DNA of 49,180 nucleotides from NCBI RefSeq assembly GCF_006345805.1, contig NW_021835785.1:1-49180 (forward strand), read 5' to 3'. The notes under the pieces are model-generated. The model made no database searches. It was given only the letters and a program-made list of their open reading frames with translations, and was not told where the DNA came from. This DNA is from Octopus sinensis (lineage: Eukaryota). Of the stretch, positions 2,700 through 45,580 are shown piece by piece; the stretch's first letter is position 1, and every line of letters begins with the position of its first letter. The position numbers and the translations under genes were made by a program.

Positions 2700-4520
2700 T
2701 GATCTCAAATTTTGGTACAAGGCCAGTAATTTTGAGGGAGGTGTAAGTGGATTATATCGACCCCTGTGTTCAACTGGTACTTATTTTATCGACACCGAAA
2801 TTATAAAAGGCAAAGTCAACTTGGGCGGAATTTGAATTAAGACCATAAAAACGAACAAAATCTCGCTAAGCATTTTGCCTAGCAGATTAACGTTTCTGAC
2901 AACCCGTTGCCTTTAGAAATTTTGGCACAAGGTCAGAAATTTCGGTAGAGGGTTTATGTCGATTACATCGAACACAGTGGTCAACTGGTACTCATTTTAT
3001 CGACTCCAAAAACCTTAAATGGCATTTGAACTCAGGAGGTTAAGACGGACGAAATGCCGCTAAGCAAGTATCCCGGCGTGCTATTATGCTAGCTCGCCGC
3101 TTTAGTTGATATTAACATCAGTTTCAAAATTTAGCATAAGGCCAGCCATTTCGGGGCTAGGAGCTAAATCGATTACCACGTATCCAGTGTTCAACTGGTA
3201 CTTAATTTATCGATCTCAAAAGGATGAAAGACAGAGTCGACCTCGGCGGAATTCGAACTCAGAACGTAAAGACAGACGAAATGCCTATTTCTTTACTGCC
3301 CACAAGGGGCTACACACAGAGGGGACAAACAAGGACAGACAAACGGATTAAGTTGATCATATCGACTACAGTGCGTAACAACTACTTATTTAATCGATCC
3401 CGAAAGGATGAAAGGCAAAGTTGACCTCGGCGGATTTGAACTCACTACGTAGCGGCAGTCGAAATACCGCTAAGCATTTAACCCGAGGTGCTAACTGTTC
3501 TACCAGTTCCCCGCCTTAGCTGATATTAATATTCTATCCTTACTCTATGAACAAGGCCCGAAATTTTGGGGGAGGGGACCAGTCAATTAGATCAACCCCA
3601 GGACACAACTGGTACTTAATTTATCGACCTCGAAAAGATGAAATGTAAAGTCGATCTCAGCAGAATTTGAACTCAAAGCATACAGACAGACGAAATACCG
3701 CTATGCATTTCGCCCTCTATGCTAACGGTTCTTATTTCTTTATTGTCCCCAAAGGGCTAAACACAGAGGGGACAAACAAGGACATACAAACGGATTACAT
3801 CGATTACATCGACCCCAGTGCGTAACTGGTACTTAATTTATCGACCCCGAAAGGATGAAAGGCAAAGTCAACCTCGGCGGAATTCGAACTCAGAACCTAA
3901 CGGCAGACCAAATACCTATTTCTTTACTACCCACAAGGGGCTAAACACAGAGAGGACAAACAAGGACAGACAAACGGATTAAATCTATTATATCGACCCC
4001 AGGGCATAACTGGTACTTATTTAATAGACCCCGAAAGGGTGAAAGGCAAAATCGACCTCGACGGAATTTGAACTCAGAACGTAGCGGCAGACGAAATACC
4101 GCTAAGCATTTCGCCCGGCGTGCTAAGGCTCAAGGTCCGAAATTTTAGGGAGGGGGCTAGTCGATTAGCTCAACCTCAGTACGTAACAGCTACTTAATTT
4201 ATAGACTCCGAAAGGATGCAAGACAAATTCGACCTCGGCGGAATTTGAACTCAGAACGTAGCGACAGACAAAATACCGCTATGCATTTCGCCCACCGTGC
4301 TAACATTTCTGTTTTCTTTATTAACCACAAGGGACTAAACATGGAGGGGACAAACAAGGACAGACAAAGGGATTAAGTCGATTAGAATGACCCCAGTGCG
4401 TAACTGGTACTTAATTTATCGACCCCGCAAGGATGAAAGACAAAGTCAACCTCGGCGGAATTTGAACTCAGAACGAAAAGACAGACGTACTAACTGTTCT
4501 GCCAGCTCACCGCCTTAGTT
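2700..4520 (-). mobile_element. cluster of about 9 same-orientation family B (MetaSINE-like) SINE copies
   Basis: repeated AACTGGTACTTA..TTTATCGACCCCGAAAGGATGAAAGGCAAAGTCGACCTCGGCGGAATTTGAACTCAG; its reverse complement GCCTTTCATCCTTTCGGGGTCGATAAATTAAGTACCAG resembles the Meta central domain. Confidence 0.9.
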
Positions 4521-9006: not shown

Positions 9007-9240
9007 GAGGTGGCGAGCTGGCAGAAACGTTAGCACGCCGGGTGAAATGCGTAGCCGTATTTCGTCTGCCGTTAAGTTCTGAGTTCAAATTCCGCCGAGG
9101 TCGACTTTGCCTTTCATCCTTTCGGGGTCGATAAATTAAGTACCAGTTACGCACTGGGGTCGATATAATCGGCTTAATCCGTTTGTCTGTCCTTGTTTGT
9201 CCTCTCTGTGTTTAGCCCCTTGTGGGTAGTAAAGAAATAC
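9007..9240 (+). mobile_element. SINE family B (MetaSINE-like), full length
   Basis: head GG(T/C)GGCGAGCTGGCAGAAACGTTAGC, B-box GAGTTCAAATTCC, Meta-like core, tail AAAGAAATA. Confidence 0.92.
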
Positions 9241-21875: not shown

Positions 21876-22716
21876 TACACGAGCAGATACCCAAAAGTAA
21901 CAGGAAACGTTCTCTCGGGGACAAGCCCATTGTAGTTCAGACTTCTGCCGACCGACGTCGTGGTATCTAGTCTTACTGCCTGTCCTTGTTTTGGGAGCTT
22001 CTCCTGTATTCGTCGATTTTTGCGTTGGCTGAAAGGAAGGAATAGCATGCTTCCATGGAATTTTGTTTTCTGCTGGAGAAATCATCCACCGAAATTATTG
22101 TCATCTCTTCAAGCAACTTACAAGGCCGATGCTATGAGTAAAATACAACTTTACTAGTGGTTTTCACACTTTAAGAATGATCACTTGTCACTTAAAGACC
22201 AACCTCGATCAGAGCGACCGTCGACATTTCGAGCGAATGAAAACCGCGAAGCTTCTTGAAGCGATCTTGAAGATCCGTCGCCAAACAACTGACGACGTTG
22301 TTGATATGAGTGGTGTGTCCTGGGGCTCCTACCAAGAAAGTTTTAGCGAAGAATTACGAATAAAGAATGTTGCAGCGAAATTTTGTGTCTCACTGGCCCA
22401 TGGATGATCAAAAGCAGACACGGCTAAATGCGCGTCGTGAACTGAAAGAACAGTTGAAAGTTCATCCAGACCTTTTCTCGAAGGTCATCACTGGTGAAGA
22501 AAGCTGGTGCAGATGTGGAAGAGGTGAAGAAGAAAAAAACCACGGAGGCGATAAAAGACACTTCACAAAAGTTCCAAGATTGCCTCGAACAAGTGGAAAA
22601 CGTGTCTGGCGGATGCATTGCTTCAAATGGAAAATACTTTGAAGGCGATAAAAGTTTAAACACGTAAAATTAAGTGAATAAAATATTGCAAAATTCAGGG
22701 TTTTTTGGGGTACACC
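21876..22716 (+). mobile_element. internally deleted mariner transposon (pseudogene)
   Basis: frameshifted LQATYKADAMSKIQLY*WFSHFKN, DDQKQTRLNARRELKEQLKVHPDLFSKVITGEESWC joined to C-terminal CIASNGKYFEGD; TIR-like GATACCCAAAAGTAACAGGAA / TTCAGGGTTTTTTGGGGTAC. Confidence 0.88.
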
Positions 22717-23434: not shown

Positions 23435-24004
23435 TGTATATGAGTCTGTAATTACATACGCGCTCACACAGACACACTCGTGTGTTTGTGCACATATGCA
23501 CGCATATATAACCGTATATACGAACTATAAACGTTAGGAGGTGAATATATTTGTTTAACAGCTCGTCGTCCTTGGATTACGACCGTTTCGCTGTCTTAAC
23601 CGATCGTAGGAGACAAACTTTGCCTCCCACCATCTATGGGTGCACGCCTATGAGCCAAGCGCATATATGAGAGGGTCTCTCAAGGCTAATTACGCAGTAT
23701 TCCGTGTTCTCACAAGTCATCCATTTTAAGTTATATATAAGGTAATAAAGATTACCTTATATATATCATATATATTAACTACAGCATTAGAGCAGTTTTG
23801 CTCTCATTTCTAGCAATGCAGGTATTTTCTAGCACTCTGGTCACATTTAGTGACATTTGTAATTTTCCATTTTGGTAAAACATTGCACACTGTTGTTTAT
23901 ATCAATTTTATATACACACATTAGCGAATCGCTAAATCAGCCAATTATTCGGAGGACAAAAACATAAACACTAATGGTGAAGAGAATCCTGAAAGAGCCG
24001 AACA

Positions 24005-24075
24005 GTCGAGCTTTCTTAGCTGATGAGGCAACGGAAGTTGCCGAAACTGACGCATCAGTATTAAGAATACTCGAT
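24005..24075 (+). ncRNA. canonical type I hammerhead ribozyme
   Basis: GTCGAG CTT TCTTAG-CTGATGA-GGCAAC GGAA GTTGCC-GAA-ACTGA CGCA TCAGT-A^TTAAGA ATA CTCGAT: invariant core intact, three closed stems, GUA triplet (cut after 24060), bulged extended stem I. Confidence 0.88.
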
Positions 24076-24194
24076 CGGCACTTTCAGATGATTATTGTCC
24101 CTGTTAGAGTATATTTTTTAATTCATGTGCATTAATTGCAGCCTTAGAGCAGTTTAGCTGTTATTTCTAGCAATGTATGGTTTATTTTTTACAG

Positions 24195-24582
24195 GTACTG
24201 TCAAGTGTGAGTCGTGGCAAACAATTTAAATCAAGACCTGATACCAATGGATTTCTTTTTTGGGGTGTTGTAAAGAACAAGGTTTATGAGAAGAATCCCA
24301 AAACAGTAAGTGAATTAAACGATTACGTTTCTGACGCATTCACCGATATTGGCGAAGATCAGAATTTGTGCCGCACTGTGTGTCAGACTGGTCTGAAGAG
24401 GTTTGAAGAATGTTGCAATGTTGAAGGATGTCATTTTGAGCATCTGAGAGATTACACATTGTCTGTTTAAGATATGTGTAAACAATATGATTGTAAGATA
24501 GAAATTTAAATGTAATAAAATGCTTTAAAGGAAATTTAAAGTGCCTATGTGATAACTGTAAACCTACTTTTGGCCACTCTGC
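24195..24582 (+). mobile_element. 3' fragment of a Tc1-like transposon
   Basis: FLFWGVVKNKVYEKNPKTVSEL...CCNVEGCHFEHL resembles the Tc1-like DFFLWGxxKxxVY...G.HFEHL C-terminus; ends in TIR-like CTACTTTTGGCCACTCTG. Confidence 0.75.
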
Positions 24583-24994: not shown

Positions 24995-25065
<71 letters not shown>

Positions 25066-25093
25066 TATATATATTATCTATATAATATATATA

Positions 25094-25127
<34 letters not shown>

Positions 25128-25308
25128 AAGCAATAAAGGGTTTAGCAACGAATTGCCTTACCACATACCGAATTTAGAAATAGCAGTCAAGGGTTATAGC
25201 TATTTCTTCTACAAAAGGGAAATCTCAGTAAAAACAGCAATTGGAAGGCAGACACAAACAGGTAAGAGAGAATGAATAGACGGCAATCTATCATACAATT
25301 TTAAGTTA

Positions 25309-25408
25309 TCTACGGACGCACGTTTCGAAATCAAGTTTTTAGGAAAGCATAAGAATTAAATATTAAATAATTCTACCTTACCCAAACTTCTTTTCTCTTC
25401 AGCGTAGA
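25309..25408 (-). ncRNA. type I HHR, array unit 1 (intact)
   Basis: minus strand TCTACG-CTGAAGA-G(67 nt)C-GAA-ACGTGCGT-C^CGTAGA; 6-bp stem I, GUC triplet, cut between 25315 and 25314. Confidence 0.82.
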
Positions 25409-25902
25409 ATACTATAATCATAAATGATTATATATTGAATTTTGAGATACTAGAAGGCACCAACTCAACTCAGTATCAGAGCGAGCTAGAATCCGCAACT
25501 AGTATCACCAAATTCAAAGTGTGAATGAAAAGATTGTGTCACCAGCCCCTTCCCACCCGCGTGTAGCCAAAACAAGATGCTGTGGTCATCTACTGAGATA
25601 AAATATGGTTATCCGTAATAATGAAGGGTGAAATTAATTAATTTGGAATAATTATCAATTACACCAAGTAGTCTTCGGCATGTAAAAGCCTCATTCGAGG
25701 AAAATTTAAGTAATACTAAGCAATAAAGGGTTTAGCAACGAATTGCCTTACCACATACCGAATTTAGAAATAGCAGTCAAAGGGTTATAGCTATTTCTTC
25801 TACTAAAAAGGGAAATCTCAGTAAAAAACAGCAATTGGAAGGCAGACACAAACAGGTAAGAGAGAATGAATAGACGGCAATCTATCATACAATTTTAAGT
25901 TA

Positions 25903-26002
25903 TCTACGGACGCACGTTTCGAAATCAAGTTTTTAGGAAAGCATAAGAATTAAATATTAAATAATTCTACCTTACCCAAACTTCTTTTCTCTTCAGCGTA
26001 GA
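25903..26002 (-). ncRNA. type I HHR, array unit 2 (intact)
   Basis: identical to unit 1 motif. Confidence 0.82.
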
Positions 26003-26496
26003 ATACTATAATCATAAATGATTATATATTGAATTTTGAGATACTAGAAGGCACCAACTCAACTCAGTATCAGAGCGAGCTAGAATCCGCAACTAGTATC
26101 ACCAAATTCAAAGTGTGAATGAAAAGATTGTGTCACCAGCCCCTTCCCACCCGCGTGTAGCCAAAACAAGATGCTGTGGTCATCTACTGAGATAAAATAT
26201 GGTTATCCGTAATAATGAAGGGTGAAATTAATTAATTTGGAATAATTATCAATTACACCAAGTAGTCTTCGGCATGTGTAAAGCCTCATTCGAGGAAAAT
26301 TTAAGTAATACTAAGCAATAAAGGGTTTAGCAACGAATTGCCTTACCACATACCGAATTTAGAAATAGCAGTCAAAGGGTTATAGCTATTTCTTCTACTA
26401 AAAAGGGAGATCTCAGTAAAAACAGCAATTGGAAGGCAGACACAAACAGGTAAGAGAGAATGAATAGACGGCAATCTATCATACAATTTTAAGTTA

Positions 26497-26597
26497 TCTA
26501 CGGACGCACGTTTCGAAATCAAGTTTTTAGGAAAGCATAAGAATTAAATATTAAATAATTCTACTACCCACCAAACTTCTTTTCTCTTCAGCTTAGA
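26497..26597 (-). ncRNA. type I HHR, array unit 3 (stem I mismatch)
   Basis: core intact; TCTACG changed to TCTAAG, breaking base pair 1.2-2.2. Confidence 0.7.
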
Positions 26598-27089
26598 ATA
26601 CTATAATCATAAATGATTATATATTGAATTTTGAGATACTAGAAGGCACCAACTCAACTCAGTATCAGAGCGAGCTAGAATCCGCAACTAGTATCACCAA
26701 ATTCAAAGTGTGAATGAAAAGATTGTGTCACCAGCCCCTTCCCACCCGCGTGTAGCCAAAACAAGATGCTGTGGTCATCTACTGAGATAAAATATGGTTA
26801 TCCGTAATAATGAAGGGTGAAATTAATTAATTTGGAATAATTATCAATTACACCAAGTAGTCTTCTGCATGTAAAAGCCTCATTCGAGGAAAATTTAAGT
26901 AATACTAAGCAATAAAGGTTTAGCAACGAATTGCCTTACCACATACCGAATTTAGAAATAGCAGTCAAGGGTTATAGCTATTTTTCTTTACTAAAAAGGG
27001 AGATCTCAGTAAAAACAGCAATTGGAAGGCAGACACAAACAGGTAAGAGAGAATGAATAGACGGCAATCTATCATACAATTTTAAGTTA

Positions 27090-27188
27090 TCTACGGACGC
27101 ACGTTCGAAATCAAGTTTTTAGGAAAGCATAAGAATTAAATATTAAATAATTCTACCTTACCCAAACTTCTTTTCTCTTCAGCTTAAA
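27090..27188 (-). ncRNA. type I HHR, array unit 4 (GAAA reduced to GAA; probably inactive or a read error)
   Basis: plus strand ACGTTCG instead of ACGTTTCG, plus the stem I mismatch. Confidence 0.55.
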
Positions 27189-27681
27189 TACTATAATCAT
27201 AAATGATTATATATTGAATTTTGAGATACTAGAAGGCACCAACTCAACTCAGTATCAGAGCGAGCTAGAATCCGCAACTAGTATCACCAAATTCAAGTGT
27301 GAATGAAAAGATTGTGTCACCAGCCCCTTCCCACCCGCGTGTAGCCAAAACAAGATGCTGTGGTCATCTACTGAGATAAAATATGGTTATCCGTAATAAT
27401 GAAGGGTGAAATTAATTAATTTGGAATAATTATCAATTACACCAAGTAGTCTTCGGCATGTAAAAGCCTCATTCGAGGAAAATTTAATTTAAGTATACTA
27501 AGCAATAAAGGGTTTAGCAACGAATTGCCTTACCACATACCGAATTTAGAAATAGCAGTCAAAGGGTTATAGCTATTTCTTCTACTAAAAAGGGGATCTC
27601 AGTAAAAAAACAGCATTGGAAGGCAGACACAAACAGGTAAGAGAGAATGAATAGACGGCAATCTATCAACAATTTTAGTTA

Positions 27682-27780
27682 TCTACGGACGCACGTTTCG
27701 AAATCAAGTTTTTAGGAAAGCATAAGAATAAATATTAAATAATTCTACCTTACCCAAACTTCTTTTCTCTTCAGCTTAGA
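27682..27780 (-). ncRNA. type I HHR, array unit 5 (stem I mismatch)
   Basis: core intact, TCTAAG variant. Confidence 0.7.
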
Positions 27781-28273
27781 ATACTATAATCATAAATGAT
27801 TATATATTGAATTTTGAGATACTAGAAGGCACCAACTCAACTCAGTATCAGAGCGAGTTAGAATCCGCAACTATTATCACCAAATTCAAAGTGTGAATGA
27901 AAAGATTGTGTCACCAGCCCCTTCCCACCCGCGTGTAGCCAAAACAAGATGCTGTGGTCATCTACTGAGATAAAATATGGTTATCCGTAATAATGAAGGG
28001 TGAAATTAATTAATTTGGAATAATTATCAATTACACCAAGTAGTCTTCGGCATGTAAAAGCCTCATTCGAGGAAAATTTAAGTAATACTAAGCAATAAAG
28101 GGTTTAGCAACGAATTGCCTTACCACATACCGAATTTAGAAATAGCAGTCAAAGGGTTATAGCTATTTCTTCTACTAAAAAGGGAGATCTCAGTAAAAAC
28201 AGCAATTGGAAGGCAGACACAAACAGGTAAGAGAGAATGAATAGACGGCAATCTATCATACAATTTTAAGTTA

Positions 28274-28373
28274 TCTACGGACGCACGTTTCGAAATCAAG
28301 TTTTTAGGAAAGCATAAGAATTAAATATTAAATAATTCTACCTTACCCAAACTTCTTTTCTCTTCAGCTTAGA
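28274..28373 (-). ncRNA. type I HHR, array unit 6 (stem I mismatch)
   Basis: core intact, TCTAAG variant. Confidence 0.7.
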
Positions 28374-28860
28374 ATACTATAATCATAAATGATTATATAT
28401 TGAATTTTGAGATACTAGAAGGCACCAACTCAACTCAGTATCAGAGCGAGCTAGAATCCGCAACTAGTATCACCAAATTCAAAGTGTGAATGAAAAGATT
28501 GTGTCACCAGCCCCTTCCCACCCGCGTGTAGCCAAAACGAGATGCTGTGGTCATCCACTGAGATAAAATATGGTTATCCGTAATAATGAAGGGTGAAATT
28601 AATTAATTTGGAATAATTATCAATTACACCAAGTAGTCTCGGCATGTAAAAGCCCATTCGAGGAAAATTTAAGTAATACTAAGCAATAACGGGTTTAGCA
28701 ACGAATTGCCTTACCACATACCGAATTAGAAATAGCAGTCAAAGGGTTATAGCTATTTCTTTCTAAAAAAGGGAGATCAGTAAAAACAGCAATTGGAAGG
28801 CAGACACAAACAGGTAAGAGAGAATGAATAGACGGCAATCTATCATACAATTTTAAGTTA

Positions 28861-28960
28861 TCTACGGACGCACGTTTCGAAATCAAGTTTTTAGGAAAGC
28901 ATAAGAATTAAATATTAAATAATTCTACCTTACCCAAACTTCTTTTCTCTTCAGCGTAGT
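28861..28960 (-). ncRNA. type I HHR, array unit 7 (5-bp stem I)
   Basis: core intact; CTACG/CGTAG pairing with an adjacent 3-nt insertion. Confidence 0.78.
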
Positions 28961-29454
28961 AGAATACTATAATCATAAATGATTATATATTGAATTTTGA
29001 GATACTAGAAGGCACCAACTCAACTCAGTATCAGAGCGAGCTAGAATCCGCAACTAGTATCACCAAATTCAAAGTGTGAATGAAAAGATTGTGTCACCAG
29101 CCCCTTCCCACCCGCGTGTAGCCAAAACAAGATGCTGTGGTCATCTACTGAGATAAAATATGGGTATCCGTAATAATGAAGGGTGAAATTAATTAATTTG
29201 GAATAATTATCAATTACACCAAGTAGTCTTCGGCATGTAAAAGCCTCATTCGAGGAAAATTTAAGTAATACTAAGCAATAAAGGGTTTAGCAACGAATTG
29301 CCTTACCACATACCGAATTTAGAAATAGCAGTCAAAGGGTTATAGCTATTTCTTACTAAATAGGGAGATCTCAGTAAAAACAGCAATTGGAAGGCAGACA
29401 CAAACAGGTAAGAGAGAATGAATAGACGGCAATCTATCATACAATTTTAAGTTA

Positions 29455-29554
29455 TCTACGGACGCACGTTTCGAAATCAAGTTTTTAGGAAAGCATAAGA
29501 ATTAAATATTAAATAATTCTACCTTACCCAAACTTCTTTTCTCTTCAGCGTAGA
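29455..29554 (-). ncRNA. type I HHR, array unit 8 (intact)
   Basis: identical to unit 1 motif. Confidence 0.82.
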
Positions 29555-29974
29555 ATACTATAATCATAAATGATTATATATTGAATTTTGAGATACTAGA
29601 AGGCACCAACTCAACTCAGTATCAGAGCGAGCTAGAATCCGCAACTAGTATCACCAAATTCAAAGTGTGAATGAAAAGATTGTGTCACCAGCCCCTTCCC
29701 ACCCGCGTGTAGCCAAAACAAGATGCTGTGGTCATCTACTGAGATAAAATATGGGTATCCGTAATAATGAAGGGTGAAATTAATTAATTGGAATAATTAT
29801 CAATTACACCAAGTAGTCTTCGGCATGTAAAAGCCTCATTCGAGGAAAAGTTAAGTAATACTAAGCAATAAAGGGTTTAGCAACGAATTGCCTTACCACA
29901 TATATATATAATTTTTGTTTTTCAGATGAGATAAAGAACCAAGGCTATGAAGATTTTAGAATATTTATAAATAG

Positions 29975-30649: not shown

Positions 30650-30650
<1 letters not shown>

Positions 30651-30910
30651 GGAGGTTAGGGCAGCGGACTCGCGGTCGTAGGATCGCGGTTTCGATTCCC
30701 AGACCGGCGTTGTGAGTGTTTATTGAGCGAAAAACCTAAAACCTCCACGAGGCTCCAGCAGGGGGTGGTGATCCTGCTGTACTTTTTCTGTTGGCCTGCT
30801 CGCTAGCCAGCGGGGTGGCGTCTCATTCGAAGGCTAAAACAATGCGAACGCATTGTGACCAGCGATGTGTAACTGCATCTGATGGACTGGTCGGTCACGT
30901 GATCACATGA
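30650..30910 (+). mobile_element. SINE family C head with tail type 2
   Basis: GTTAGGGCAGCGGACTCGCGG head; tail identical in type to 8236-8352. Confidence 0.88.
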
Positions 30911-31616
30911 TGTATATATATAAATATATATATACATATGCACACCTACATACTGGTTTTTACATATTTATATGCATATAATTATCATACATGCATTCTT
31001 ATATATATACATAAATACGCACGCGTGCGCGCGTGTGGGAACGATCTGTTAAAGACGCATTCAGAAATATCTTCGTATATGCGTAATAATACCGACACCA
31101 ATATAATTCCAAACTACAACAACCGCTAGAGCAATATTAGTATAAATAAATAAATATTGAATACAATGGAGTGCAACAAAAGCATAGAAATTTCAAAATT
31201 TAATCAAAATCTTGTATTTTTACAGAAAATACAGCAAACATTTGTGAAATAAGAGGTTTGTATTTTCATAGAAAATATTTATTAGTTCAGCAGTGATATG
31301 AGAATATCCGAGACTGCGAGGGAGTATTGGAAATAATTTTGAAGAAAATACAAGTAATTATATAATGTATATCTGTCTCTCTCACTATACTAACAAACTT
31401 TACGTACATATATATATATACGTATATATATATATATATATATATAACATAAGGGACTAAAGCCATCTGAATATGGCTAGGGACAGGGCAGGGTGGTGGG
31501 GGTGTTACTGTTGCATTTAGCCCCAGGCGAACATCAACGTCGCCAGATAGGCTTGACACCGTCACGGCGTCCTCTATCCTGCAAAGGGAGATAATTCCCC
31601 GATGAAGCGGAAACCA

Positions 31617-31661
31617 CACACGGACCTAGGTTTCAAGGTGTTTGCCTATTATCAACGTATG
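31617..31661 (-). ncRNA. type I HHR with U3-A8 covariation
   Basis: reverse complement of 31950-31994. Confidence 0.7.
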
Positions 31662-31949
31662 GTAGGCACCCGCTTCCTCGACGAACCACTCACTCTGCAG
31701 GATATTTATATAGATTTTCAGGCAAAATACATTTGCTGATTTCGAAAATCTGTTCGACAGCAATAATAATTCTCTAAATGAGATATAGACAGTAACTGCT
31801 CCATAACATAAGGGACTAAAGCCATCTGAATATGGCTAGGGACAGGGCAGGGTGGTGGGGGTGTTACTGTTGCATTTAGCCCCAGGCTTGAAAATCTATA
31901 TATAAATATCCTGCAGAGTGAGTGGTTCGTCGAGGAAGCGGGTGCCTAC

Positions 31950-31994
31950 CATACGTTGATAATAGGCAAACACCTTGAAACCTAGGTCCGTGTG
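31950..31994 (+). ncRNA. type I HHR with U3-A8 covariation
   Basis: CATACG-TTGATAA-T AGG CAAACA CCT T-GAA-ACCTAGGT-C^CGTGTG: 6-bp stem I, palindromic stem III, GUC triplet (cut after 31988). Confidence 0.7.
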
Positions 31995-32203
31995 TGGTTT
32001 CCGCTTCATCGGGGAATTATCTCCCTTTGCAGGATAGAGGACGCCGTGATGGTGTCAAGCCTATCTGGCGACGTTAATGTTCGCCTGGGGCTAAATGCAA
32101 CAGTAACACCACCCTGCCCTGTCCCTAGCCATATTCAGATGGCTTTAGTCCCTTATGTTATGGAGCAGTTACTGTCTATATCTCATTTAGAGAATTATTA
32201 TTG

Positions 32204-32244
<41 letters not shown>

Positions 32245-32534: not shown

Positions 32535-32950
32535 AAGGCGGCGAGCTGGCAGAATCGTTAGCACGCCGGGCGAAGAGCTTAACAGTATTTCGTCTGCCGC
32601 TACGTTCTGAGTTCAAATTCCGCCGAGGTCGACTTTGCCTTTCATCCTTTCGGGGTCGATTAAATAAGTACCAGTTACGCACTGGTGTCGATATAATCGA
32701 CTTAATCCGTTTGTCTGTCCCTGTTTGTCTTCTCTATGTTTAGCCCTTGTGGGTAGTAAAGAAATAGGTATTTCGTCTGTCTCTACGTTCTGAGTTAAAA
32801 TTCCGCCGACGTCGACTTTGCCTTTCATCCTTTCGGGGTCGATTAAATAAGTACCAGTTACGCACTGGGGTTGATGTAATCGACTTAATCTCTTTGTCTG
32901 TCCTTGTTTGTCCCCCACCCATGTTTAGCCTCTTTGTGGGCAGTAAAGAA

Positions 32951-32953
<3 letters not shown>
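32535..32953 (+). mobile_element. SINE family B dimer (full copy plus 5'-truncated copy)
   Basis: junction AAAGAAATAG|GTATTTCGTC at ~32767. Confidence 0.9.
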
Positions 32954-37905: not shown

Positions 37906-38088
37906 CTATCAGGAGAGAAATACAAAGGCGGGAGAACAGAGAGAGAAGTAAGTAATAAGAGTCGATTCTTGTAAAAAACTGTATTTACCCAAAATGTCAT
38001 CCAGTGGATTGAACACGGTACCTCGCGGTTGCGTTTAACCGTTTGACTATGCAACGTCTTAAACATTTGAATATGAAACATCTTAACC

Positions 38089-38320
38089 TATTTCCTTACT
38101 ACCCACAAGGGGCTAAACACAGAGAGGACAAACAAGGACAGACCAACGGATTAAGTCGATTATATCGACCCCAGTGCGTAACTGGTACTTGATTTATCGA
38201 CCCTGAAAAGATGAAAGGCAAAGTCGACCTCGGCGGAATTTGAACTCAGAACGTAACGGCAGACGAAATACCGCAAAGCATTTCGCCCGGCATGCTAACG
38301 TTTCTGCCAGGTCACCGCCT
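38089..38320 (-). mobile_element. SINE family B, young insertion
   Basis: 17-bp TSD TATGAAACATCTTAACC (38072-38088 / 38321-38337). Confidence 0.95.
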
Positions 38321-43661: not shown

Positions 43662-43680
43662 AATAATAATAATAATAATG

Positions 43681-43744
<64 letters not shown>

Positions 43745-43767
43745 TAATAATAATAATAATAATAATG

Positions 43768-43819
<52 letters not shown>

Positions 43820-43842
43820 TAATAATAATAATAATAATGATA

Positions 43843-43912
<70 letters not shown>

Positions 43913-44081
43913 GATAATAATAATAACAACAATGATGATGATAATAATATAATAATAATAATAATAATATAATAATAATAACTATAACAATAATAATAAT
44001 AACAACAACAACAATAATAATAATAATAATAATAACAACAATAATAATAACAATAATAATAATAACAATAATAATAATAAC

Positions 44082-44127
<46 letters not shown>

Positions 44128-44152
44128 TAATAATAATAATAATAATATAATA
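43662..44152. repeat. (AAT)n microsatellite with GAT/AAC interruptions, ~490 bp
   Basis: direct reading; source of the 208-aa poly-I/Y ORF. Confidence 0.97.
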
Positions 44153-44589
44153 AATGAAATGAAAGCAGATAAACTAGCATTAAAACCTTTACTTTTTCTT
44201 TTTGCATTTTTCTTGACTTTGAAAAAAATTTCGGCTGGTTTCTATTAGATTCAGATAGACAGACATCAAGCAAGAATGTGTCAGGTTAAATTTCTGGGAA
44301 GGATTGATTCGCTTACATCTATCTACTTAAAGTTTATTCAGAAACGACAGTTTTGGGTGAGGTTCAACTGCGCTACTAATACGCTACTAGATATCTGAGA
44401 GCTGATGACATGAGCGAAAACAGTTCCGCTAGATATGGAACTCCTCCTTCATCGTCTCCATTACTTCTCATCACCTATATCGGAATATGTCTGTTATTAC
44501 AATCATATAACTTAAACCATACATACAGACATAAATGCGAATATGCGTTGATGTGTGTATATATGTGTGCGTGCGTACTATATGCATAT

Positions 44590-44594
44590 ATATG

Positions 44595-44663
<69 letters not shown>

Positions 44664-44678
44664 TATGTATAATAAATA

Positions 44679-44711
<33 letters not shown>

Positions 44712-44789
44712 AATATCTATATATATAGATATATGTATATAATATATATATATATATGTATATATAAATATATATAAATATTTATATAT

Positions 44790-44834
<45 letters not shown>

Positions 44835-44855
44835 TAATATATATATATATATATA

Positions 44856-44951
<96 letters not shown>

Positions 44952-45020
44952 TATATATATATAAATATAATATAATATAATATAATATATATTAAATATA
45001 TATATATATATATATAAAAT

Positions 45021-45070
<50 letters not shown>

Positions 45071-45134
45071 TATATATTATATAAATATATATATATATAT
45101 ATTATATATATATATATATATAAATATATAATAT

Positions 45135-45189
<55 letters not shown>

Positions 45190-45227
45190 TAGATATATAT
45201 ATTATATATAAATATATATATATAATA

Positions 45228-45301
<74 letters not shown>
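44590..45301. repeat. long imperfect (TA)n tract, ~700 bp
   Basis: direct reading. Confidence 0.95.
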
Positions 45302-45304
<3 letters not shown>

Positions 45305-45307
<3 letters not shown>

Positions 45308-45580
45308 GTAAAAGAGTAAGGAGTACATATATATATTATATATATATATATATATATACTCTTTACTTTTACTCTTTTACTTGTTTCAGTCATTTGATGG
45401 TGGCCATGCTGAAGTACCGCCTTTAGTCGAGCAAATCGACCCCAGGACTTATTCCTTGTAAGCTTTGTACTTAATCTATCGGTCTCTTTTGCCGAACCGC
45501 TAATTGACGGTGAAGTAAACACGCCAATATCGGTCGTCAAGCGATGTTGGGAGGGGACAAACACAGACACGAACATACAA

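What the first reader, a model, noticed from the sequence alone, without database searches (positions are those of the whole stretch)
25124..29902. 4.8-kb satellite is an 8-mer of a ~594-nt hammerhead-ribozyme unit (candidate large retrozyme/circRNA element)
Seen: 8 head-to-tail units plus ~40 bp terminal redundancy, inserted between (TA)n tracts, with no ORF. Each unit carries on the minus strand TCTACG-CUGAAGA-stem II-GAA-ACGUGCGU-C^CGUAGA, a complete type I hammerhead core with a GUC site. Known: tandem genomic repeats with one type I HHR per unit (non-LTR retrozymes, Penelope-like pseudo-LTRs) are transcribed, self-cleaved to monomers and can circularise. The metazoan monomers I recall being described are mostly ~170-400 nt. 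Inference: a minus-strand read-through transcript would release ~594-nt monomers, possibly circRNA, larger than typical and perhaps an undescribed cephalopod family mobilised in trans by a Penelope-like RT.
Basis: partly seen in the sequence, partly recalled or inferred. Interest (0 to 1): 0.92.

Follow-up and report, generated by a model that had tools for sequence, protein, structure and literature searches.

The report
Tandem hammerhead-ribozyme repeat, retrozyme type
An eight-copy head-to-tail repeat of a roughly 592-bp non-coding unit carries a self-cleaving hammerhead ribozyme motif on its minus strand, which makes it a new but fairly ordinary example of the "retrozyme" repeats already known from many animals.

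Summary
Window 25124-29902 contains 8 head-to-tail units of 590-595 bp plus a 44-bp partial unit. The units are about 97% identical, 35% G+C and have no conserved ORF. A 131-bp (TA)n tract lies on the left, but only about 9 nt of TA lie on the right.

Each unit carries a type I hammerhead on the minus strand: 6-bp helix I, CUGAAGA, a 69-nt helix II, GAA, a 2-bp helix III with a GUGC loop, and cleavage at GUC^C. No such motif appeared in 400 shuffles. Rfam Hammerhead_1 aligns end to end but scores below threshold (21.2 vs 34 bits) because of a 65-nt insertion in helix II.

Only units 1, 2 and 8 are fully intact. Unit 7 has a 5-bp helix I, units 3, 5 and 6 have a helix I mismatch, and unit 4 has lost a core A.

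Two ribozyme domains co-fold into a double hammerhead with an 8-bp helix III. The minus-strand monomer is unusually structured (z = -6.2).

The best reading is a non-LTR retrozyme-type insertion, now decaying. Its size is not exceptional: published families span 51-972 bp.

Expression, circularisation, dispersed copies, a Penelope-like partner and cephalopod origin could not be tested.

The parts
25124..29902 (-). Whole tandem array: 8 units of 590-595 bp plus a 44-bp partial unit. The ribozyme-sense strand is the minus strand.
   Evidence: unit boundaries, about 97% pairwise identity, 35% G+C.
25309..25408 (-). Hammerhead domain of unit 1, fully intact. Cleavage falls between 25315 and 25314.
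   Evidence: Descriptor scan. Rfam RF00163 aligns full length at 21.2 bits, E = 0.0039. Sequence.
25903..26002 (-). Hammerhead domain of unit 2, fully intact. Cleavage at 25909/25908.
26497..26597 (-). Hammerhead domain of unit 3. The core is intact, helix I has a C2.2->A mismatch, and the distal part of helix II is altered. Cleavage site 26503/26502.
27090..27188 (-). Hammerhead domain of unit 4, inactivated. One A of G12-A13-A14-A15.1 is deleted and helix I is damaged.
27682..27780 (-). Hammerhead domain of unit 5. The core is intact, helix I has a C2.2->A mismatch, and distal helix II has a 1-nt deletion. Cleavage site 27688/27687.
28274..28373 (-). Hammerhead domain of unit 6. The core is intact and helix I has a C2.2->A mismatch. 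Cleavage site 28280/28279.
28861..28963 (-). Hammerhead domain of unit 7. The core is intact and a 3-nt insertion leaves a 5-bp helix I. Cleavage at 28867/28866.
29455..29554 (-). Hammerhead domain of unit 8, fully intact. Cleavage at 29461/29460.
29859..29902 (-). 44-bp terminal redundancy (a ninth, partial unit). It is equivalent to a 40-44-nt extension at either end of an exact 8-mer.
   Evidence: It is comparable in length to the 30-40-bp 'tail' of Penelope-like insertions (PMC8557442, PMC11167929).
24995..25125 (.). (TA)n microsatellite abutting the left end of the array, the probable insertion target. On the right only TATATATAA (about 29900-29910) remains.

Best explanation
The array is a genomic copy of a non-LTR retrozyme-type element: a non-coding, non-autonomous repeat whose minus-strand transcript carries one type I hammerhead per unit.

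Inferred life cycle:
- A minus-strand transcript that spans at least two units folds its ribozymes. These most likely act as a double hammerhead, in which the quasi-palindromic ACGUGCGU of two neighbouring domains pairs into an 8-bp helix III.
- As in other retrozymes, a host tRNA-type ligase could circularise these monomers into a highly base-paired circular RNA.
- A reverse transcriptase supplied in trans, most plausibly from a Penelope-like element, copied such an RNA more than once around, or copied a multimeric RNA, into a (TA)n microsatellite. That produced the 8-mer plus a 44-nt overhang.
- Since insertion the copy has decayed neutrally and has been partly homogenised between neighbouring units. 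Only units 1-2 and 7-8 now provide consecutive competent ribozymes.

What is shown: the tandem anatomy, the ribozyme motif and its non-randomness, the dimer-compatible helix III, the strand-specific structure, the lack of coding capacity and the decay pattern. What is inferred: transcription, cleavage, circularisation, reverse transcription and the identity of the mobilising enzyme.
For: Tandem anatomy: 8 units plus 44 bp at about 97% identity.

Ribozyme motif:
- The full core is present: C3-U4-G5-A6-A7-G8-A9, a G10.1-C11.1 pair, G12-A13-A14, an A15.1-U16.1 pair and C17, flanked by a 6-bp helix I.
- 0 of 400 shuffles reach this quality.
- Rfam Hammerhead_1 aligns over model positions 1-45 of 45, E = 0.0039 on the 131-nt slice. 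Its helix III and cleavage site are near-identical to the family consensus, GAAACGcgCGUC.
- Helix I of 6 bp, helix II of 4 bp before the first loop, and a 2-bp helix III with a tetraloop match the 'canonical metazoan type I' architecture described in PMC4209133 and PMC7229834.

Folding:
- The catalytic fold lies only 2.1 kcal/mol above the MFE of the isolated domain.
- The MFE of two domains together is exactly the double hammerhead, with an 8-bp intermolecular helix III and unpaired core nucleotides: -54.0 against 2 x -22.3 kcal/mol.
- The minus-strand monomer has MFE -163.7 kcal/mol, z = -6.24. The plus strand has -126.9, z = -3.05. The minus-strand fold has 21 G-U pairs against 4 in the plus-strand fold.
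- 11 of 13 background windows have z between -1.8 and +1.7.
- The circular fold is 64% paired.

Class features:
- 35% G+C, no conserved ORF, no tRNA or LTR features.
- The (TA)n target and the 40-44-nt terminal extension fit published Penelope-like signatures. Non-autonomous Penelope-like derivatives are known to give multicopy head-to-tail insertions (PMC8557442; PMC11167929).
Against: - The Rfam score is below the gathering threshold (21.2 vs 34 bits), and there was no hit at all in the larger searches.
- The 69-nt helix II replaces the usual loop 2. The canonical loop1-loop2 tertiary contact may therefore be absent, and activity at physiological Mg2+ is uncertain.
- The isolated 111-nt domain is not significantly structured (z = -1.7), and its MFE pairs core nucleotides.
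- Four to five of the 8 ribozymes are damaged. The ribozyme region holds 12 of 61 variable columns while making up 17% of the unit, so this copy shows no sign of selection.
- No second copy of the unit was found anywhere I could look.
- No reverse transcriptase, GIY-YIG domain or minimal Penelope-type hammerhead was found in the window.
- U5-U6 runs on the minus strand argue against Pol III transcription, and no promoter was identified.
- Variants shared between neighbouring units (columns 102, 291, 496) show that at least part of the array's history is DNA-level turnover rather than one rolling-circle event.
Confidence: 0.75

Rival explanations
1. This is an ordinary DNA-level tandem duplication or satellite. 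A sequence that happened to contain a relic hammerhead, perhaps from an old retroelement, was amplified by unequal crossing-over or replication slippage next to a microsatellite. No RNA-mediated life cycle operates for this family.
For: - Variants are shared by adjacent units: units 1-2, units 3-6 and units 7-8.
- The ribozyme is not better conserved than the rest of the unit.
- No other copy was found in 44 kb of flanking sequence or in any reachable database.
- The region is extremely rich in microsatellites, which favours slippage and unequal exchange.
Against: - A complete hammerhead with dimer-compatible helix III is not expected in a random duplicated segment (0 of 400 shuffles).
- The strong, strand-specific RNA structure of the whole unit is on the same strand as the ribozyme.
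- The non-integer copy number with a 40-44-nt overhang abutting (TA)n is a signature of retroelement insertion.
- This rival also does not exclude a retrozyme origin. It only denies current RNA-level activity.
Confidence: 0.15
2. The array is not a separate 'retrozyme' but a run of pseudo-LTR-derived units from a specific autonomous Penelope-like element, that is, an internally deleted, ORF-less derivative of that element.
For: [quoted passage not shown]
- Non-autonomous Penelope-like derivatives give multicopy head-to-tail insertions with 30-40-bp tails and target microsatellites (PMC8557442).
- The array has a 44-bp overhang and sits next to (TA)n.
Against: - The ribozyme is of the canonical type, with a helix III stem and loop and a 4-bp helix II base. 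It is not the minimal helix-III-less variant typical of metazoan Penelope-like pseudo-LTRs (PMC4209133; my minimal-hammerhead scan found none).
- There is no RT or GIY-YIG remnant nearby.
- No parent element sequence is available for comparison.
Confidence: 0.08
3. The hammerhead is a chance match, or the 8-copy structure is an assembly artefact.
For: - The Rfam score is below the gathering threshold.
- Many differences between units are single-base indels in homopolymers, as expected from long-read errors.
Against: - Shuffle expectation is 0.04 loose hits per 45 kb and 0 of 400 at the observed quality.
- The alignment to RF00163 is end to end.
- The units differ by distinct substitutions, so they are not a collapsed or duplicated read artefact. 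The exact copy number remains unverified.
Confidence: 0.02

Closest known systems
Metazoan non-LTR retrozymes (Cervera & de la Pena 2020, PMC7229834; Li, Clavereau & Pollet 2026, bioRxiv 10.64898/2026.07.22.740005)
   Same: Both are head-to-tail tandem repeats with one type I hammerhead per unit. They have no ORF, LTR, PBS or PPT, have G+C below 45%, and the predicted monomer RNA is highly self-paired. The array is a dimer-to-multimer copy, and at least two consecutive complete ribozymes are present.
   Different: The unit is 590-595 bp. This lies above the roughly 150-450 bp of the first description but inside the 51-972 bp range of the 2026 survey. Helix II is a 69-nt extended hairpin instead of 4 bp plus a loop. 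Expression, circular RNA and dispersed copies have not been shown here.
Salamander satellite 2 / axolotl Rtz_331 and Rtz_353 hammerheads (dimeric type I; Forster et al. 1988, as cited in PMC7229834)
   Same: Helix III is weak: 1-2 bp capped by a (quasi-)palindromic tetraloop. Efficient cleavage is therefore expected only as a double hammerhead between tandem units. The GAAACGnGCGUC segment is nearly the same as the Rfam type I consensus, which is dominated by these sequences.
   Different: The salamander units are 330-350 bp and keep the conserved loop 1/loop 2 contacts. Here loop 2 is replaced by an internal AG/GA loop and a long extension, and the centre of helix III is G-U rather than G-C.
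Dolichopoda cave-cricket pDo500 satellite (PMC2837043)
   Same: It is a repeat of roughly 500 bp with one hammerhead. Multimeric transcripts are processed to monomers, and a double-hammerhead mode has been proposed. It is comparable in size to this unit.
   Different: pDo500 is a high-copy satellite, about 5% of the genome, and is conserved across species with compensatory changes. Here only one 8-copy array is known, with no comparative data.
Pseudo-LTR hammerheads of Penelope-like elements (PMC4209133; PMC8557442; PMC11167929)
   Same: Both have a type I topology, dimer-dependent architecture and tandem or partial-tandem insertions. Both show an optional terminal 'tail' of 30-40 bp and a microsatellite, (TA)n, target preference.
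   Different: Penelope-like elements carry an RT plus GIY-YIG ORF between the repeats. Their metazoan ribozymes are usually minimal, with no helix III stem, a 6-8 bp helix II and an extra nucleotide before 10.1. None of this applies here.
Plant LTR retrozymes (PMC4918200)
   Same: Both are non-autonomous and ribozyme-bounded. The RNA monomers are of similar size (600-1000 nt) and accumulate as structured circular RNAs.
   Different: The plant elements have type III hammerheads inside LTRs, carry a PBS and a PPT, have G+C above 55% and are mobilised by Ty3/Gypsy elements. They are two-copy LTR structures rather than multimeric arrays.

Membership tests
Non-LTR retrozyme | Head-to-tail tandem repeats (dimer to multimer) of one unit | tested here: met
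   8 units plus a 44-bp partial unit at about 97% identity.
Non-LTR retrozyme | A type I hammerhead with complete conserved core in each unit; at least two consecutive complete motifs | tested here: met
   The core is complete in 7 of 8 units. Units 1, 2 and 8 are fully intact and unit 7 has a 5-bp helix I. Units 1-2 and 7-8 are consecutive. The domain MFE of -22.3 kcal/mol is below the -5 cut-off of Li et al..
Non-LTR retrozyme | No coding capacity and no LTR, PBS or PPT | tested here: met
   The longest ORF is 63 aa and is not conserved between units. There is no tRNA-like site. A six-frame query found no protein relatives.
Non-LTR retrozyme | Low G+C (below 45-50%) | tested here: met
   35.0% G+C in the array.
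Non-LTR retrozyme | Unit size of a few hundred bp | tested here: inconclusive
   590-595 bp lies outside the 150-450 bp range of PMC7229834 but inside the 51-972 bp range of the 2026 survey. The unit is not a dimer of about 297-bp subrepeats.
Non-LTR retrozyme | Monomer RNA predicted to be highly self-paired | tested here: met
   The minus-strand MFE is -163.7 kcal/mol, z = -6.24, and the circular form is 64% paired. Typical background z values lie between -1.8 and +1.7.
Non-LTR retrozyme | Self-cleavage of transcripts, and linear plus circular monomer RNAs in vivo | not testable with these tools
   This needs in-vitro transcription with PAGE, a northern blot, and RNase R with divergent RT-PCR.
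Non-LTR retrozyme | Family of dispersed copies (solo, dimer, multimer) in the genome | not testable with these tools
There is no second copy in the window, in 68 kb of fetched loci, which come from another lineage, in the protein database, or in JGI metagenomes.
Non-LTR retrozyme | Co-occurrence with Penelope-like elements in the same genome | tested here: inconclusive
   No Pfam RT or GIY-YIG hit was found in ORF fragments of at least 55 aa from about the first 44 kb of the window, and no minimal hammerhead was found in the whole window. 49 kb says little about a whole genome.
Rfam RF00163 Hammerhead_1 | Score at or above the curated gathering threshold (34 bits) | tested here: not met
   The score is 21.2 bits with a full-length alignment of positions 1-45 of 45. 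The deficit is caused by a 65-nt insertion in the helix II loop. There was no hit in the larger searches.
Rfam RF00163 Hammerhead_1 | Conserved core nucleotides, three-helix junction and an NUH cleavage triplet | tested here: met
   CUGAAGA, a G10.1-C11.1 pair, GAA, an A15.1-U16.1 pair and GUC are present. Helix I has 6 bp, helix II has 4+6+... bp, and helix III has 2 bp, or 8 bp in the dimer.
Penelope-like element (autonomous) / pseudo-LTR | RT plus GIY-YIG ORF flanked by the repeats | tested here: not met
   There is no ORF in or beside the array and no Pfam hit.
Penelope-like element (autonomous) / pseudo-LTR | 30-40-bp terminal 'tail' and insertion into a microsatellite | tested here: inconclusive
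   The 40-44-bp terminal redundancy and the (TA)n on the left side are compatible with this. They are equally expected from arbitrary ends of a rolling-circle cDNA.

The most novel reading that the evidence does not exclude
The array represents an active, so far undescribed retrozyme family of unusually large unit size, about 0.6 kb. Its type I hammerhead has replaced loop 2 with a helix II extension of about 60 nt and works as a double hammerhead. It would yield abundant circular RNAs of about 592 nt in a lineage, possibly cephalopods, where no retrozyme has been reported. Together with the second, compact hammerhead 1.1 kb upstream, it would indicate that (TA)n microsatellites in this genome are recurrent landing sites for ribozyme-bearing retroelements.
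Probability: 0.3. Interest if true: 0.55.

Novelty: new member of a known kind. Interest (0 to 1): 0.4.

Why it matters
If it is active, the element would be a natural source of a 0.6-kb ribozyme-processed circular RNA. It would extend retrozymes to another animal lineage.

It would also show that a type I hammerhead tolerates a helix II extension of about 60 nt. That bears on how the helix I/helix II tertiary contact is achieved, and on why covariance-model scans run at curated thresholds miss such copies.

Practically, it is a reminder that Rfam gathering-score scans under-report retrozymes with expanded stems.

It does not open a new category. Tandem hammerhead repeats of 50-970 bp are already documented in many animals.

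Tried and rejected
- Rfam at gathering score on the whole window, and at E <= 10 on the 5.2-kb array: no hammerhead. Only a 131-nt slice exposed the sub-threshold RF00163 alignment.
- TRF missed the array because its period limit is 500.
- Search for further copies of the unit. All of these found nothing:
  - blastn against the rest of the window
  - exact look-up of the 59-aa spurious ORF
  - a 1341-aa six-frame pseudo-protein against the 5.8-billion-protein database
  - an exact ribozyme pattern in JGI metagenome contigs
  - blastn against 68 kb of ENA loci reached through a neighbouring transposase fragment
- Those ENA loci lack the SINE that occurs 19 times in the window, so they come from a different lineage.
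- Organism identification from transposase and SINE-derived peptides returned only unnamed ENA/JGI mariner hits. A literature search for the SINE string found nothing.
- Penelope-like remnants were not found. Pfam on 8.2 kaa of non-low-complexity ORF fragments from about the first 44 kb of the window gave nothing, and a minimal-hammerhead descriptor gave nothing.
- The unit is not a higher-order dimer of about 297-bp subrepeats: half-against-half alignment scores fall within the null.
- Pol III A and B boxes, TATA elements and tRNA-like parts are absent.
- Raw MFE compared with other 594-nt windows is not exceptional, because background windows contain inverted repeats. Only z-scores against each window's own shuffles separate the unit from typical background.

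Full report
**Observation**

Splitting the region on a conserved anchor and aligning the pieces shows eight head-to-tail units. Their lengths are 590, 595, 595, 592, 590, 592, 591 and 590 bp, from 25124 to 29858. A ninth, 44-bp partial unit follows at 29859-29902. TRF did not list the array only because its longest period is 500.

Mean pairwise identity is 97.0%, range 95.0-98.8%. Of 605 alignment columns, 61 are variable. Most variants are private to one unit, and many are single-base indels. The array is 35.0% G+C against 33.8% for the window. The longest ORF is 63 aa, and ORFs change from unit to unit.

On the left the array abuts a 131-bp (TA)n tract (24995-25125). On the right only TATATATAA separates it from unique sequence, and the next (TA)n lies 400 bp away. 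'Between (TA)n tracts' is therefore only half right. The array sits at the edge of one tract.

**The ribozyme**

On the minus strand each unit reads UCUACG-CUGAAGA-(69 nt)-GAA-ACGUGCGU-C^CGUAGA. This supplies every conserved hammerhead position:
- C3 to A9
- the G10.1-C11.1 pair
- G12-A13-A14
- the A15.1-U16.1 pair
- C17 as the cleavage nucleotide

Helix I has 6 bp, continued after a 2x2 mismatch by 2 further pairs. Helix II has 4 bp, then a tandem AG/GA internal loop, then 6 bp and a further long hairpin. Helix III is only A-U and C-G, closed by GUGC.

Apart from the extended helix II, this is the 'canonical metazoan type I' layout described in PMC4209133: helix I of 6 bp, helix II of 4 bp, and helix III of 1-2 bp with a small palindromic loop.

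My own descriptor scan found the motif in units 1, 2, 7 and 8. It found nothing comparable elsewhere on that strand.

In 400 dinucleotide-preserving shuffles of the de-duplicated window, a loose descriptor gave 0.04 hits per 45 kb. No shuffle reached the array's helix lengths. The motif is not chance.

**Why Rfam missed it**

Rfam reported nothing at gathering score on the whole window. It also reported nothing at E <= 10 on the 5.2-kb array.

On a 131-nt slice, RF00163 Hammerhead_1 aligns over all 45 model positions at 25309-25408, minus strand. The score is 21.2 bits (gathering 34) and E = 0.0039. A 65-nt insertion sits where the model expects 10 nt in helix II. The GAAACGUGCGUC segment is nearly identical to the family consensus GAAACGcgCGUC.

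**State of the eight copies**

- All eight units keep CUGAAGA and GUC.
- Units 1, 2 and 8 are fully intact.
- Unit 7 has a 3-nt insertion that leaves a 5-bp helix I.
- Units 3, 5 and 6 carry C2.2->A, which gives a G-A mismatch at the second pair of helix I. Units 3 and 5 also have changes in distal helix II.
- Unit 4 has lost one A of GAAA and part of helix I, and is dead.

The ribozyme region holds 12 of the 61 variable columns while making up about 17% of the unit. This copy therefore shows no sign of purifying selection.

A few variants are shared by neighbours: column 102 in units 1-2, column 291 in units 3-6, and column 496 in units 7-8. Some DNA-level homogenisation, or a heterogeneous template, is therefore part of the array's history.

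**Folding**

The isolated 111-nt domain is not significantly structured (MFE -22.3 kcal/mol, z = -1.7). Its MFE pairs some core nucleotides. The catalytic fold is only 2.1 kcal/mol higher.

The MFE of two domains together is exactly a double hammerhead. The two ACGUGCGU segments form an 8-bp intermolecular helix III with two central G-U pairs. Helix I is swapped between the molecules, and all core nucleotides are unpaired. The energy is -54.0 against 2 x -22.3 kcal/mol. This is the mode known for salamander, cricket and Penelope-type hammerheads (PMC7229834, PMC2837043, PMC4209133).

The 594-nt minus-strand monomer, cut at the predicted sites, folds to -163.7 kcal/mol against -124.4 +/- 6.3 for shuffles, z = -6.24. 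The plus strand reaches only -126.9, z = -3.05. As circles the values are -157.2 and -121.1, and the minus strand is 64% paired. The minus-strand fold uses 21 G-U pairs and the plus-strand fold uses 4.

As a control I folded other 594-nt windows. Raw MFE and strand asymmetry are not exceptional against that background, which contains inverted repeats. By z-score, however, 11 of 13 microsatellite-free windows lie between -1.8 and +1.7. One lies at -3.1, and one at -32.8 is a large inverted repeat. The unit is therefore unusually structured for this region, and more so on the ribozyme strand.

**What it is**

The array has the defining features of the metazoan non-LTR retrozymes of Cervera & de la Pena (PMC7229834):
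- a tandem arrangement
- one type I hammerhead per unit
- no ORF, LTR, PBS or PPT
- G+C below 45%
- a highly self-paired monomer

It also meets the operational 'active retrozyme' rule of Li et al. [quoted passage not shown]

The 40-44-nt terminal redundancy and the (TA)n target match published signatures of Penelope-like elements:
- an optional 30-40-bp 'tail', explained by two internal start sites of reverse transcription (PMC11167929)
- a microsatellite insertion bias, and multicopy head-to-tail insertions of non-autonomous derivatives (PMC8557442)

These signatures are compatible with Penelope-like mobilisation but do not prove it. Arbitrary ends of a rolling-circle cDNA would look the same.

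**Size claim**

That is true for the 170-400 nt range of the 2020 paper. The 2026 survey, however, reports consensus lengths of 51-972 bp, with a mean of 650 bp in ray-finned fishes. The hammerhead satellite pDo500 of cave crickets is about 500 bp.

I also tested whether the unit is a higher-order dimer of about 297-bp subrepeats. It is not.

The one structurally unusual feature is the 69-nt helix II.

**What could not be tested**

I could not reach the source genome. The following all found nothing:
- blastn of the unit against the rest of the window
- an exact ORF look-up
- a six-frame pseudo-protein search of the 5.8-billion-protein collection
- a ribozyme pattern scan of JGI metagenomes

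Loci reached through a neighbouring transposase fragment (L001-L005) share only that fragment. They lack the SINE that occurs 19 times in the window, so they belong to other lineages.

The organism stays unidentified, so the 'cephalopod' attribution is untested.

No reverse transcriptase or GIY-YIG remnant was found in ORF fragments from about the first 44 kb of the window, and no minimal Penelope-type hammerhead was found anywhere in it.

No Pol III boxes or tRNA-like parts are present. U5-U6 runs on the minus strand argue against Pol III transcription. The promoter is unknown.

The literature held by the tool contains no report of retrozymes or hammerheads in cephalopods.

**Verdict**

This is a real, non-random hammerhead-bearing tandem repeat, best filed as a new member of the non-LTR retrozyme kind. 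It carries an expanded helix II, and roughly half of its ribozymes are already damaged.

The proposed mechanism has five steps: minus-strand read-through transcription, double-hammerhead cleavage to monomers of about 592 nt, ligase-mediated circularisation, reverse transcription by a Penelope-like enzyme, and insertion into (TA)n. It is inferred by analogy and is consistent with every structural test I could run. No step after 'the motif exists' has been shown.

Interest is moderate. The class is known and widespread, and the size is within the published range.

**Seen in passing**

A second, compact and very clean type I hammerhead lies on the plus strand at about 24004-24076. A complex inverted-repeat element lies between (TA)n tracts at 31444-32205.

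Noticed in passing
window 24004-24076 (+): A second, unrelated hammerhead lies on the opposite strand, 1.05 kb upstream of the array. Helix I is UCGAGCUUUCUUAG/UUAAGAAUACUCGA (7 bp, a 2x2 loop, then 5 bp). It continues CUGAUGA, helix II GGCAAC-GGAA-GUUGCC, GAA, helix III ACUGA-CGCA-UCAGU, with cleavage at GUA^U. 0 of 400 shuffles give such a motif. Rfam RF00008 scores 24.5 bits, E = 0.004, on a 301-nt slice, and the fold z is -4.2. Its stable helix III suggests it could cleave as a monomer. An exact-pattern scan of metagenomes found no copy.
   Followed up: partly
window 23749-23818 and 24106-24175: A 70-nt direct repeat, 77% identical and 357 nt apart, brackets the compact hammerhead. It may be an old '1.2-mer' of a retrozyme family of about 357 bp. 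It abuts a 5'-truncated mariner-like element.
   Followed up: partly
window ~24190-24582 (+), ITR at 24549-24575: This is the 3' part of a Tc1/mariner-type element. It comprises the C-terminal transposase fragment ORF at 24177-24470 and a perfect 27-nt terminal inverted repeat. Only the 3' ITR is present. Relatives at 76-84% DNA identity occur in unnamed ENA contigs.
   Followed up: partly
window ~22000-22700 (+): A Mos1-type mariner deletion derivative with frameshifts. It gives a weak HTH_48 hit, and its relatives carry PF01359 and PF13358.
   Followed up: partly
window 31444-32205: A complex inverted-repeat element lies between two (TA)n tracts. One pair of arms is 242 nt at 93% complementarity, and another is 99 nt at 100%. 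The segment folds to -413 kcal/mol. It could be a foldback element, a MITE, or a tandem/inverted insertion of the kind Penelope-like elements make. No hammerhead was found in it.
   Followed up: no
window, e.g. 32585-32953, 3733-4100, 9057-9239, 38086-38271: A SINE-like repeat of about 183 bp occurs as 19 copies or fragments in 49 kb, at 79-95% identity. A tRNA-like head with a B-box-like GGTTCGATTCC is visible at about 30650-30700. The repeat is absent from the 68 kb of fetched ENA loci.
   Followed up: partly
window 43662-44153 and 44586-45358: There are very long microsatellites: (AAT)n of about 490 bp and (AT)n of about 770 bp. TRF lists 95 rows of tandem repeats for the 49-kb window, some of them overlapping calls for the same array, so the region is exceptionally rich in microsatellites.
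   Followed up: no
window 25124-29902 (-), within each unit: The ribozyme-sense strand contains U5 and U6 runs (GCUGUUUUUUACUG and CCCUUUUUAG). These would terminate Pol III. No A box, B box or TATA box is present.
   Followed up: partly
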